Assembly (NCBI GenBank): GCA_963924565.1
Contig: OZ004607.1
Coordinates: 13,764,001 to 13,828,000, forward strand
Direction of reading: 5' to 3'
DNA: 64,000 nt
DNA from: Ascidiella aspersa
Lineage: Eukaryota
Made by a program: the position numbers and the translations under genes. The notes under the pieces are model-generated. The model ran no database searches and was not told the DNA's origin. It saw nothing but the letters and a program-made list of their open reading frames with translations. Shown here in pieces: positions 23,647-26,032 of the stretch; position 1 is the stretch's first letter, and each line of letters opens with the position of its first letter.

Positions 23647-24979
23647 ATCTGAACGGTCGTCATCCAGAGATATGACCGAACAGTTAACAATAATAAGGCG
23701 ATTATTTTTGGCCGAAAAGGTCAAAATTTTGTCAAAATTATATCTAATTAAAATCATCTAGACTTAAAAAACAACGTTTAAAATGGTCGTTTAGTTTGAA
23801 AGTTTGTTAAAATTCAGCTTTGAATTACTTCCAACAACATTTTAACTATAGCCTATCGCCCTATTCTATCTTCATTACAGCAATGTAGGCCTACGATAAA
23901 TGCGAGCCGGCAGATTAAGAACGCAGGCCTGACTTCAGATCAAACTTTTTTGCGTTAGATACTTGTGTTTCCGATTTGGATAAATGTATTGGAAGGTAAG
24001 GCTATTTGCTGTATCTTTTTTTTGGTGGGAATTTGCAACTATACCATTCCCACGTTTGATAAAATGCCTTTGTTTTTTTTTGCTTTTTTTACATTGTATT
24101 TCAACTACACTGTTTGGCCTACTCAACAATTTTACTAAATAACCACAGTCTAACTCTATTGTTTACATTTGGATTTTTTATAGTTTTTGTTCCTTTTTGA
24201 TACGGTATGTCAAAATATCAAAGAAGAATTTTAAACTTTTCCTAAACCTAAAAAAAATAACTGATTTGTGTTCCACCGGTCGTCAGAAAAGACATAAAAA
24301 TGTCTGAAGACGCTGAGACACATATGCGGCATCTTAAAGAACAATGCGCTTTTAAATTAATGTATTCTTAAAAGGTCAAAATATTGTCATAAAAAGTTTT
24401 ATTTATTGGTCAAAATAACAATTAAATCGCCCCCAAGTAAAACAAAATTCCTTAAAACCTTTGAATCAAATAATTTAACAAAATCATTGCTATGGTTTGC
24501 CTCGAGTAAAACAGACAACTGATTGTTAAAGGCGATAACACTTGTGAATCACGGAGCTGCGAAATGCCAATTTATAACGACACGTACGCAAATCTTTTGG
24601 GACCAGTCCAACTAACTCTGAGTTAAGTTATGACACAGTATAGTTATTATTACTGTGCAACAGTAAAACACCTGCAATAAACCATAGTCATACACCTATA
24701 CACAATGTTTTACAGTTAATTTAGGTACACGTAAAATAATTTTAACAATGTGCACAAGACAAGGTTTTATTTACTCTTTGGGCAAAAATCCAAACCTCAG
24801 GCAAATAGAAACCAACAAAAAAGTTAAAACGAAAAAATAATCATACTGAGTAAGGAATTTGTCGCGGAAACATACGATAAGAACTACAAAGCAACTCCAA
24901 TATACCGACGCCAAAAACTTCTAAATCCATGAGTCGCGCAACAAGTTTGTAGTAGGAAAAAAAAGCAGTTCCTTAACAG

Positions 24980-25846
24980 GTACACCCAAAGCCATCGCAG
25001 ACTCACCGAATCTGTTGATCTATGATGCAAGCAGAGCAGACTAGAAAAACAACTAGCCTGCAGTGAGGTTCGAACACACGACCTCCGATCAAGCCGGGAC
25101 CGTCGCTCTACCAACTGAGCTATGCAGGCTCAGAAGGGAACGAGTCGAGAAACAACCATGCGCCAATGCTTGCTCAATCTGTTAGTACAAGCAACCTCAT
25201 AGAAGTGGATCCACAGTACCATATCATTTATTCAATGAAACATTCACACATATGTGTGTTAATAACTGAGATCTAGCCCTTCGAAGCTGCTTTGTGACCA
25301 ACGACTACGGCTTATGTATAATTAGTACACCGAAAGCCATCGCAGACTCACCGAATCTGTTGATCTATGATGCAAGCAGAGCACACTTGAAAAACAACTA
25401 GCCTGCAGTGAGGTTCGAACTCACGATCTCCGGTCAAGCCGGGACCGTCGCTCTACCAACTGAGCTATGCAGGCTCAGAAGGGAACGAGTCGAGAAACAA
25501 CCATGCGTCAATGCTTGATCAATCTGTTAGTACAAGCAACCTCATAGAAGTGGATCCACAGTACCATATCATTTATTCAATGAAACATTCACACATATGT
25601 GTGTTAATAACTGAGATCTAGCCCTTCGAAGCTGCTTTGTGACCAACGACTACGGCTTATGTATAATTAGTACACCGAAAGCCATCGCAGACTCACCGAA
25701 TCTGTTGATCTGTGATGCAAGCAGAGCCAACTAGAAAAACAACTAGCCTGCAGTGAGGTTCGAACTCACGACCTCCGGTCAAGCCGGGACCGTCGCTCTA
25801 CCAACTGAGCTATAAAGGCTCAGACGGGAACGAGTCGAGAAACAAC
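24980..25846 (-). mobile_element. Tandem 2.5-mer of the 345-bp tRNA-bearing repeat (tRNA-like copies at 25055-25129, 25400-25474, 25745-25819)
   Basis: Period 345 bp (units start at 24980, 25325, 25670); 12-bp TSD TTCCTTAACAGG (24969-24980) / TTCCTTAATAGG (25848-25859). Confidence 0.88.
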
Positions 25847-26032
25847 ATTCCTTAATAGGCTGCGTGTTACTTTGTTTATATTCACTTATAAATAACAAAT
25901 ATCTCTGTTAGGCCTACCAACATAGCACTACCTAAGTTTGAGCATTTCTCAAACTATAAGCAGTTTGCAAAAACAACACCATCTCTGTGAGAGGTATAGT
26001 AAAACAAAAAACAAACAACTGATTTGCTAGGC

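What the first reader, a model, noticed from the sequence alone, without database searches (positions are those of the whole stretch)
24969..25859. tRNA-containing 345-bp unit inserted as a multimer with a TSD: candidate retrozyme/Sm-alpha-like retroposon
Seen: 2.5 head-to-tail copies of a 345-bp unit, bounded as one block by a 12-bp TSD, with no poly(A) or simple-repeat tail and no TIR. The tRNA-like module sits in the middle of the unit, with conserved sequence upstream, so this is not an ordinary SINE that starts at its tRNA head. The independent, diverged insertion at 18 kb ends at essentially the same position (...TTCGGTGTAC, tRNA-sense) while the 5' ends differ. Known: a fixed 3' end, variable 5' end and variable TSD are hallmarks of target-primed reverse transcription; animal retrozymes and Schistosoma Sm-alpha repeats are tandem few-hundred-bp units that carry hammerhead ribozymes. 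Inference: the template is a multimeric or circular RNA with a defined cut or priming site. As I find no intact hammerhead, processing may use an unrecognised ribozyme or the tRNA fold itself (RNase P/Z).
Basis: partly seen in the sequence, partly recalled or inferred. Interest (0 to 1): 0.85.

Follow-up and report, generated by a model that had tools for sequence, protein, structure and literature searches.

The report
tRNA-bearing Penelope-style retroelement array
The 2.5-unit repeat is a real, fairly young insertion of an abundant non-coding mobile element that carries a tRNA look-alike and inserts the way Penelope-like retrotransposons do, without any ribozyme; the scan had already met this family elsewhere in the same genome.

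Summary
Window 24980-25846 is 2.5 head-to-tail copies of a 345-bp unit (96% alike) on the minus strand. Each unit carries a tRNA-like module. The block is flanked by a 12-bp target duplication with one mismatch, and has no poly(A) and no terminal inverted repeats.

It is one insertion of a family with well over 1,000 copies in this 309-Mb animal genome. I analysed 66 insertions plus genome-wide marker counts:
- Target duplications are 9-17 bp.
- 5' truncation is heavy.
- There are two 3' termini: unit position 345 (precise) and about position 96 (diffuse). The 96-nt "tail" lies between them.
- 29 of 66 insertions are two-armed, head to head. In 20 of the 21 that can be classified, only one end carries the tail.
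- Arrays of two or more full units are rare, a few percent of loci.

This matches the published signature of Penelope-like elements (PLEs). Their reverse transcriptase starts internally at two nearby sites and extends both DNA strands.

No hammerhead or other known ribozyme is present. No terminus lies at the edges of the tRNA module. So "retrozyme-like" describes how the element behaves, not what family it belongs to.

The autonomous partner and the RNA could not be examined. Earlier follow-ups in this scan reached the same reading on other copies.

The parts
24980..25846 (-). The whole insertion, 867 bp. In tRNA sense it reads [unit pos 169-345][1-345][1-345] and ends at ...GGTGTAC (pos 345 = window 24980).
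   Evidence: TRF; BLAST against the unit
24969..24980 (.). Target-site duplication, copy next to the element's 3' end (TTCCTTAACAGG). The last G is shared with the element: 1 nt of microhomology at the reverse-transcription start.
25848..25859 (.). Target-site duplication, copy next to the element's 5' end (TTCCTTAATAGG). One extra base (25847) separates it from the element.
24980..25324 (-). Unit 1 (pos 1-345), the 3'-most unit. It has 7 differences from the family consensus; 4 of them are shared with unit 2.
25325..25669 (-). Unit 2 (pos 1-345). It has 9 differences from the consensus; 4 of them are shared with unit 1.
25670..25846 (-). Unit 3, 5'-truncated (pos 169-345). Its 5' end falls in the zone just upstream of the tRNA module where 5' ends of single-arm insertions cluster.
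25055..25129 (-). tRNA-like module of unit 1 (unit pos 196-270). Acceptor, D and T arms and the A/B boxes are intact. The anticodon arm is 19 nt, with loop CCGGCUU, and cannot decode.
   Evidence: read from the sequence
25400..25474 (-). tRNA-like module of unit 2.
25745..25819 (-). tRNA-like module of unit 3.
25390..25394 (-). T5 run, a Pol III terminator-like tract, 6 nt after the tRNA module (unit pos 276-280). The same tract lies at 25045-25049 and 25735-25739.
25307..25339 (-). Predicted hairpin spanning the unit 2/unit 1 junction (pos 331-345 + 1-18). Terminus 345 is the first base of its apical loop. The hairpin can form only in RNA longer than one unit. A second copy lies at 25652-25684.
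   Evidence: fold, (prediction only; no covariation available)
25569..25583 (-). Predicted small A/U-rich hairpin (pos 87-101) whose loop holds the second family terminus (mode 95-96). It is used as an end in other copies, not in this array. A second copy lies at 25224-25238.
17996..18566 (.). Second, independent insertion from an older subfamily. It has two arms, head to head: 17996-18303 on the minus strand, crossing a unit junction and ending outward at about pos 89; and 18304-18566 on the plus strand, ending outward at pos 345. The arms are 99% alike. The duplication TATATATTTAA lies at 17985-17995 and 18569-18579.

Best explanation
The block is one retrotransposition event of a non-autonomous, non-coding retroelement. 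Its 345-nt unit consists of a tRNA-derived module with intact Pol III A and B boxes, a T5 run, and about 270 nt of unrelated sequence.

Shown:
- The family is dispersed at more than 1,000 loci.
- Insertions are 5'-truncated and flanked by 9-17-bp target duplications.
- Insertions end at one of two sites: pos 345 (exact) or about pos 96.
- Many insertions are two-armed, head to head, and the 96-nt tail sits at one end only.
- No known ribozyme is present.

Inferred:
- The element is copied in trans by a Penelope-like element (PLE) enzyme. That enzyme binds RNA longer than one unit and starts reverse transcription internally at two defined sites. Here both sites sit in loops of predicted small hairpins, and one of these hairpins exists only across a unit junction.
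- The enzyme can prime from both cut DNA strands, which produces the two-armed insertions.
- Under internal initiation, only copies that keep sequence downstream of a start site could serve as sources. That would make multi-unit arrays like this one the potentially competent copies.
- The tRNA module most likely acts as the promoter. A third of single-arm insertions begin within the 45 nt just upstream of it (pos 151-195).
- This array would then be a full-length copy of a transcript that began in front of a tRNA module, read through two T5 runs and was primed at pos 345.
For: - Copy number: the 19-mer at pos 327-345 occurs 1,271 times with <=1 mismatch, against 0 for the reversed control. The first look with the whole unit found 3,187 candidates.
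- Coverage profile from 19-mers: pos 327-345, 1,271; junction 336-345|1-9, 636; pos 11-29, 757; pos 100-118, 395; pos 171-189, 687. About half of the 345 ends are termini, and coverage drops again after about pos 96.
- Ends, from 66 insertions and 96 arms: 51 3' ends lie at 343-345 (41 exactly at 345) and 30 lie at 87-99.
- Target duplications: a score of 9 or more in 26 of 66 insertions, against 1.2% of shuffled flank pairs. Lengths are 9-17 bp, median 13. Target GC is 0.31, against 0.37 for the window.
- Two-armed insertions: 29. Twenty pair a 345 end with a ~96 end, one is 345/345, none is 96/96. P = 7e-7 to 2e-5 against independent choice of ends.
- Arrays of 2-3.3 units sit inside a single duplication at several loci, for example L006, which has the same architecture as the window copy.
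- Literature on PLE insertions: they are 5'-truncated partial tandems, often with an inverted truncated copy at the 5' end, a tail often at one end only, and duplications of variable length (PMC8557442). A purified PLE protein cuts and extends both strands and starts internally at two adjacent sites in a stem-loop, and those sites define the tail (PMC11167929).
- The genome holds at least 25 GIY-YIG matches above the Pfam cut-off, including four in tandem with a 3,422-bp period.
- 5' ends of single-arm insertions: 12 of 37 fall in pos 151-195, where 4.8 are expected (P = 0.002).
Against: - No autonomous partner was examined.
- On contigs C1 and C2, none of the exact marker hits listed there lies near a GIY-YIG hit. 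The element is therefore not simply a piece of those PLE copies.
- The tail is 96 nt, not the 30-40 nt reported for PLEs.
- The start-site hairpins are predictions. The older subfamily changes the top pair of the junction hairpin without compensation.
- A T5 run right after the tRNA module should stop most Pol III transcripts before either start site.
Confidence: 0.7

Rival explanations
1. An ordinary LINE-dependent SINE. A LINE without poly(A) recognises the ...GGTGTAC end, the inverted arms arise by twin priming, and the ~96 ends arise by microhomology priming on the A/U-rich stretch.
For: Target duplications of 9-17 bp, 5' truncation and 1-7 nt of overlap between ends and duplications. The ~96 terminus is diffuse and lies in the most A/U-rich part of the unit. 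In the 18-kb copy and in L042, the outer end of the inverted arm (87-89) and the start of the sense arm (83-85) nearly coincide, as twin priming predicts.
Against: Head-to-tail multi-unit insertions with no linker or tail between units are not a LINE feature. In most two-armed copies the two break points are 35-250 nt apart. The strict pairing of one 345 end with one ~96 end (20 of 21) and the 44% frequency of two-armed insertions match what is described for PLEs (PMC8557442). There is no LINE-like 3' microsatellite or A-rich tail.
Confidence: 0.15
2. The retrozyme-like route. Multimeric transcripts are cut at 345|1 by an unrecognised ribozyme or a host nuclease, circularised, and copied by rolling-circle reverse transcription.
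For: The 345|1 junction is the main 3' terminus. It is also a mild hot spot for 5' ends: 10 of 96 lie within about 7 nt, where 4.2 are expected (P = 0.009). Units 1 and 2 of the array share 4 variants. The dimer RNA folds better than shuffles (z = -5.7).
Against: No hammerhead, twister, HDV-like, hairpin, pistol or hatchet match at E<=10, and no hammerhead core on either strand. The 5' ends near the junction are spread over about 15 nt rather than falling at one bond. A second terminus at ~96 and the one-tail rule are not explained by a single cut. Internal initiation explains a fixed end without cleavage, and hammerhead cleavage is dispensable for PLE insertion in vitro (PMC11167929). No terminus lies at the tRNA borders.
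Confidence: 0.08
3. Local satellite growth. A single-unit insertion was later expanded to 2.5 units by unequal crossing-over or replication slippage.
For: The units differ at 3-6 private positions each, so some time has passed since insertion. Tandem repeats can expand locally.
Against: The target duplication brackets the whole array. Independent loci show the same partial-unit-plus-full-units layout inside a single duplication (L006, L013, L015, L017, L029). The array's 5' end lies in the family's 5'-end cluster.
Confidence: 0.04

Closest known systems
Non-autonomous Penelope-like elements (for example MRC1 and other non-autonomous Chlamys elements) and the PLE insertion signature in general (PMC8557442; PMC11167929)
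   Same: Multi-copy head-to-tail insertions, heavy 5' truncation, an inverted truncated copy at the 5' side, an optional tail at one end only, target duplications of variable length, and two internal start sites for reverse transcription. Some PLE clades (Naiad, most Chlamys) also lack hammerheads.
   Different: The tail is 96 nt, not 30-40 nt. The element carries a tRNA-derived Pol III-type module. Sequence similarity to an autonomous PLE was not shown here.
Animal non-LTR retrozymes (PMC7229834; bioRxiv 10.64898/2026.07.22.740005)
   Same: Non-coding units of about 170-400 bp in tandem, low GC, target duplications longer than 4 bp, and proposed dependence on PLEs.
   Different: Retrozymes are defined by a type I hammerhead in every unit and by circular RNA. 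This element has no hammerhead or any other known ribozyme, and circles could not be tested. Most copies here are shorter than one unit.
Schistosoma Sm-alpha / Sj-alpha SINE-like elements (cited in PMC2770079 and PMC8490949)
   Same: A unit of about 335 bp, both dispersed and tandem. tRNA-finding programs call a tRNA in it (about 2,300 tRNA-Gln-like hits in S. mansoni), so it is likewise a tRNA-like module joined to unrelated sequence.
   Different: Sm-alpha carries an active hammerhead; this element does not. Sequence homology was not tested. The original paper could not be read.
Classical tRNA-derived SINEs mobilised by LINEs
   Same: A tRNA-derived module with A and B boxes, target duplications, 5' truncation and high copy number. 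Many copies begin just upstream of the tRNA module.
   Different: No LINE-type 3' tail. Two alternative 3' ends. More-than-unit and two-armed insertions. About 100 nt of conserved sequence upstream of the tRNA module belongs to the unit. A T5 run directly follows the tRNA.

Membership tests
Retrozyme (animal, non-LTR) | A hammerhead ribozyme motif (type I, CUGANGA...GAAA core) in each unit | tested here: not met
   Rfam cmscan at E<=10 on 24940-25880 and at E<=1 on 17-27 kb finds only tRNA. A regex for canonical and U3-A8 cores on the consensus, both strands, gives 0 hits.
Retrozyme (animal, non-LTR) | Tandem units of a few hundred bp bounded by target duplications | tested here: met
   2.5 x 345 bp inside a 12-bp duplication. 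Other loci hold up to 3.3 units. Arrays of 2 or more units are only a few percent of loci.
Retrozyme (animal, non-LTR) | Unit-length circular RNA | not testable with these tools
Sm-alpha-like SINE | A tRNA-like Pol III promoter module | tested here: met
   tRNA model, 46-55 bits. A and B boxes were read from the consensus.
Sm-alpha-like SINE | An active hammerhead in the unit | tested here: not met
PLE-dependent non-autonomous element | More-than-unit (partial tandem) insertions with heavy 5' truncation | tested here: met
   coverage profile
PLE-dependent non-autonomous element | An inverted 5'-truncated copy adjoining the insertion, with the whole structure inside one target duplication | tested here: met
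   29 of 66 insertions are two-armed. Clear duplications bracket L003, L009-L011, L014, L020, L024, L030, L042, L044, L046 and the 18-kb copy.
PLE-dependent non-autonomous element | Two alternative 3' ends (an optional tail), with the tail often at one end only | tested here: met
   Ends at 343-345 (51 arms) and 87-99 (30 arms). 20 of 21 classifiable two-armed insertions carry the tail at one end only. The tail is 96 nt, against the published 30-40 nt.
PLE-dependent non-autonomous element | Target duplication of variable length | tested here: met
   9-17 bp, median 13, n = 24
PLE-dependent non-autonomous element | Endonuclease-bearing PLEs present in the same genome | tested here: inconclusive
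   25 GIY-YIG matches above the cut-off, four of them in tandem with a 3,422-bp period. The loci could not be cut out to confirm a linked reverse transcriptase.
PLE-dependent non-autonomous element | Sequence or structure shared with the autonomous element around its reverse-transcription start sites or 3' end | not tested
LINE-dependent SINE | A 3' tail derived from a partner LINE, or an A-rich or microsatellite tail | tested here: not met
   Copies end at ...GGTGTAC or near pos 96 and are followed directly by the target duplication. A partner LINE was not searched for.
LINE-dependent SINE | The element starts at its Pol III-transcribed head | tested here: inconclusive
   12 of 37 single-arm insertions start 1-45 nt upstream of the tRNA module (P = 0.002). 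Many others start elsewhere, and about 30% of copies extend further upstream.
Functional tRNA gene | A 5-bp anticodon stem with a 7-nt loop carrying U33 and a purine at 37 | tested here: not met
   The anticodon arm is 19 nt with loop CCGGCUU (C33, U37), read from the consensus. ARAGORN places the anticodon at position 36 or cannot name it.

The most novel reading that the evidence does not exclude
The 345|1 junction, which is both the main 3' terminus and a mild hot spot for 5' ends, could be a true RNA processing site. An unrecognised self-cleaving fold or a host nuclease acting on the junction hairpin would release unit-length RNA, possibly circular. That would make this a ribozyme-class-free or new-ribozyme counterpart of retrozymes.
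Probability: 0.07. Interest if true: 0.85.

Novelty: new variant of a known kind. Interest (0 to 1): 0.5.

Why it matters
PLE retrotransposition is the least understood of the major retrotransposon mechanisms. This family offers a natural 345-nt, non-coding, ribozyme-free substrate that reproduces every odd feature of PLE insertions.

It shows with numbers that the two start sites are used in a coupled way: one tail per two-armed insertion, in 20 of 21 cases. That points to one RNA-protein complex priming from both DNA strands at two different template sites, which can be tested directly in the published in vitro system.

It also shows that a PLE-style element can combine a tRNA-type Pol III module with no hammerhead. 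That blurs the line between SINEs and retrozymes.

For annotation, the family will produce thousands of false tRNA calls and palindromic "hairpins" in this genome.

Tried and rejected
- **Ribozymes.** Rfam at permissive thresholds and hammerhead core searches, including the U3-A8 variant, found nothing.
- **tRNA-processing ends.** No 3' terminus lies at unit pos 195/196 or 270/271.
- **Spliced leader at 5' ends.** Another family in this genome is reported to carry one. None was seen in 37 single-arm copies.
- **Covariation for the start-site hairpins and the tRNA fold.** The young and old subfamily consensuses differ at only 12 positions. One change is a one-sided C-to-U in the acceptor stem that keeps a wobble pair, and one breaks the top pair of the junction hairpin. 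This is not informative.
- **Partner search.** GIY-YIG loci were located but could not be fetched. No reverse-transcriptase ORF lies in the held 324 kb.
- **Other species.** An exact 24-mer of the odd anticodon arm has no match in metagenome contigs.
- **Host identity.** The protein atlas lookup of an NRDE-2 exon gave no useful taxon. Earlier scan notes mention an ascidian spliced leader; I did not verify this.
- **My first reading.** I began with LINE twin priming and downgraded it after the census and the PLE literature.
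Full report
**1. What is in the window**

Positions 24980-25846 hold 2.5 head-to-tail copies of a 345-bp unit, with 96% matches and no indels. Each unit has a tRNA-like module on the minus strand, scoring 46-55 bits on the Rfam tRNA model.

Read in tRNA sense, the block is [unit pos 169-345][1-345][1-345] and ends at ...GGTGTAC. 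I number the unit so that this C is pos 345. The tRNA module is then 196-270, and a T5 run lies at 276-280.

The block is bracketed by TTCCTTAACAGG and TTCCTTAATAGG. There is no poly(A), simple-repeat tail or terminal inverted repeat.

**2. The second copy in the window**

The copy at 17996-18566 is a single insertion inside an 11-bp duplication (17985-17995 / 18569-18579). It is two-armed and head to head.
- The plus-strand arm ends outward at pos 345.
- The minus-strand arm crosses a unit junction and ends outward at about pos 89.
- The arms are 99% alike, although the copy belongs to an older subfamily that is 88-92% identical to the young consensus.

**3. Family census**

The genome is 308.6 Mb in 75 contigs. 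A search with the whole unit found 3,187 first-look candidates. Marker 19-mers with <=1 mismatch gave the counts below; reversed controls gave 0, or 1 for the junction marker.

| Unit position | Count |
|---|---|
| 327-345 | 1,271 |
| junction 336-345\|1-9 | 636 |
| 11-29 | 757 |
| 100-118 | 395 |
| 171-189 | 687 |

So about half of all 345 ends are true termini. Coverage decays in the 5' direction, and it drops by about half again across pos ~96.

I analysed two samples:
- The 30 best full-unit loci.
- 40 loci anchored only on an exact 19-mer at the 345 end.

Together they gave 66 insertions and 96 arms.

Results:
- **3' ends.** 51 lie at 343-345 (41 exactly at 345) and 30 at 87-99 (mode 96). 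None lies at the tRNA borders.
- **Target duplications.** A score of 9 or more in 26 of 66 insertions, against 1.2% of shuffled flank pairs. Lengths are 9-17 bp, median 13, in slightly AT-rich DNA.
- **Length.** In the anchored sample no arm exceeds one unit. Among exact hits of the pos 100-118 marker on contig C1, only 2 of 24 loci hold it more than once. Arrays like the window's are therefore the long tail of the length distribution.
- **Two-armed insertions.** 29 of 66 insertions are two-armed inside one duplication. Twenty pair a 345 end with a ~96 end, one is 345/345, none is 96/96, and eight have other ends. Against independent choice of ends, P = 7e-7. Allowing for ascertainment, P = 2e-5.

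**4. What this matches**

My first reading was LINE twin priming. Earlier notes of this scan on other copies of the family pointed to Penelope-like elements. I checked that lead against the literature and against my own census.
- Craig et al. 2021 (PMC8557442) describe PLE insertions as heavily 5'-truncated partial tandems. They often have an inverted truncated copy at the 5' side, a short tail that is often present at one end only, and target duplications of variable length. The same paper reports hammerhead-less PLE clades, and non-autonomous elements that insert as multi-copy head-to-tail arrays.
- Frangieh et al. 2024 (PMC11167929) show that a purified PLE protein cuts and extends both DNA strands. 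It starts reverse transcription internally at two adjacent sites in a stem-loop, and those sites define the genomic tail. Hammerhead cleavage is dispensable for insertion.

Every one of these features is met here. The exceptions are the tail length (96 nt against 30-40 nt) and the one test I could not run, similarity to an autonomous PLE.

The genome does hold at least 25 GIY-YIG matches, four of them in tandem with a 3,422-bp period.

**5. Start sites**

Folding a junction-spanning RNA puts pos 345 in the apical loop of a two-step hairpin formed by pos 331-345 and 1-18. That hairpin exists only in RNA longer than one unit. The ~96 terminus falls in the loop of a small A/U-rich hairpin at pos 87-101.

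These are predictions. The two subfamily consensuses are too similar to give covariation.

Internal initiation implies that only copies keeping sequence downstream of a start site can act as sources. That fits the long-standing statement that PLEs need more-than-unit copies to be competent (PMC4209133). It would also make multi-unit arrays such as this one the candidate source copies.

**6. Role of the tRNA module**

The A and B boxes and three arms are intact. The anticodon arm is rebuilt (19 nt, loop CCGGCUU), so the module is not a decoding tRNA.

Twelve of 37 single-arm insertions begin within the 45 nt just upstream of the module, at pos 151-195, where 4.8 are expected (P = 0.002). The window array (169) and its look-alike L006 (179) are among them. 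This fits a transcription start set by the module.

The T5 run right after the module argues that most Pol III transcripts would stop too early. The promoter role is therefore an inference, not a finding.

5' ends are also mildly enriched around the junction: 10 of 96, where 4.2 are expected (P = 0.009). Five tail arms stop within the first 6 nt of the unit, two of them exactly at pos 1 (L009, L010, L061, L064, L063). This could mean that a second enzyme starting at ~96 is blocked by the complex at 345. It could also mean the RNA is cut there.

**7. Ribozymes**

Rfam finds nothing but tRNA, at E<=1 over 10 kb and at E<=10 over the array. Neither canonical nor U3-A8 hammerhead cores occur on either strand of the consensus. 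The element therefore works like a retrozyme or Sm-alpha element but fails their defining test.

**8. Age and origin of this array**

Units 1 and 2 share four variants against the family consensus and carry three and five private changes. Unit 3 carries six in 177 nt. The target duplication has one mismatch in 12.

The array is a moderately young single insertion from a source carrying those four variants. Local satellite expansion is unlikely, because the duplication brackets the whole array and independent loci have the same layout.

**9. Limits**

No partner element was examined. The 5'-end statistics rest on about 100 arms. The host species was not identified; earlier notes mention an ascidian spliced leader, which I did not verify. 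Whether the family is already in Repbase or Dfam could not be checked. I found no paper describing a tRNA-bearing, hammerhead-less PLE-type element.

**10. Verdict**

This is a real feature: a member of a family the scan has already met several times in this genome, and best described as a new variant of a known kind. It is a non-autonomous element with the PLE insertion signature that has a tRNA-type module and no ribozyme. The quantified one-tail coupling and the junction-spanning start-site hairpin are the new points, and both can be tested.

Noticed in passing
window 21610-23646: Two 373-bp direct repeats (21610-21981 and 23274-23646) are 99.7% alike and 1,664 bp apart. They begin TG and end CA and are flanked by a possible 4-bp duplication (ATCT). 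There is no long ORF between them. It looks like a young, small non-autonomous LTR element (TRIM-like).
   Followed up: partly
window 20613-20854 and 38947-39215: Two copies (87-96% alike, in opposite orientation) of a palindromic repeat of about 170-240 bp with near-perfect 75-nt arms. Rfam gives sub-threshold plant-miRNA-like hits. It looks like a MITE or fold-back element, possibly one of the hairpin-type mini retroelements noted elsewhere in this genome.
   Followed up: no
window 27562-28158 (+) and 43478-43927 (-): Two EF-hand-pair exons in inverted orientation about 15 kb apart, lying in inverted repeats 83-85% alike (27824-28134 against 43535-43842). This is an inverted gene duplication.
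   Followed up: no
window 35531-36037 (-): An open frame with a clear NRDE-2 domain match (Pfam E = 1e-16). It is probably an exon of the host NRDE-2 homologue.
   Followed up: no
G000:C5:2,998,232-3,092,729: Ten exact hits of the pos 11-29 marker, all on the plus strand, spaced about 5.9-6.2 kb apart with some larger gaps of 10.8-24.8 kb. A copy of the element appears to have been carried along in a large local tandem duplication.
   Followed up: no
G000:C2:30,628,752-30,640,503: Four GIY-YIG matches on the minus strand at an exact 3,422-bp period, each in an open frame of 166-293 aa. This is probably a tandem array of a Penelope-like element and a candidate autonomous partner.
   Followed up: no
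L011 (G000:C4:25.59 Mb) and L046 (G000:C1:23.01 Mb): Two insertions with different target duplications share almost the same inner junction: one arm starts at pos 318-322 and the other at pos 276. This is either a hot spot for joining the two cDNAs or the copying of an already two-armed source.
   Followed up: no
L012 (G000:C2:0.697 Mb) and L016 (G000:C3:39.19 Mb): The same insertion with the same flanks appears on two contigs in opposite orientation. This is either a segmental duplication or an assembly duplicate.
   Followed up: no
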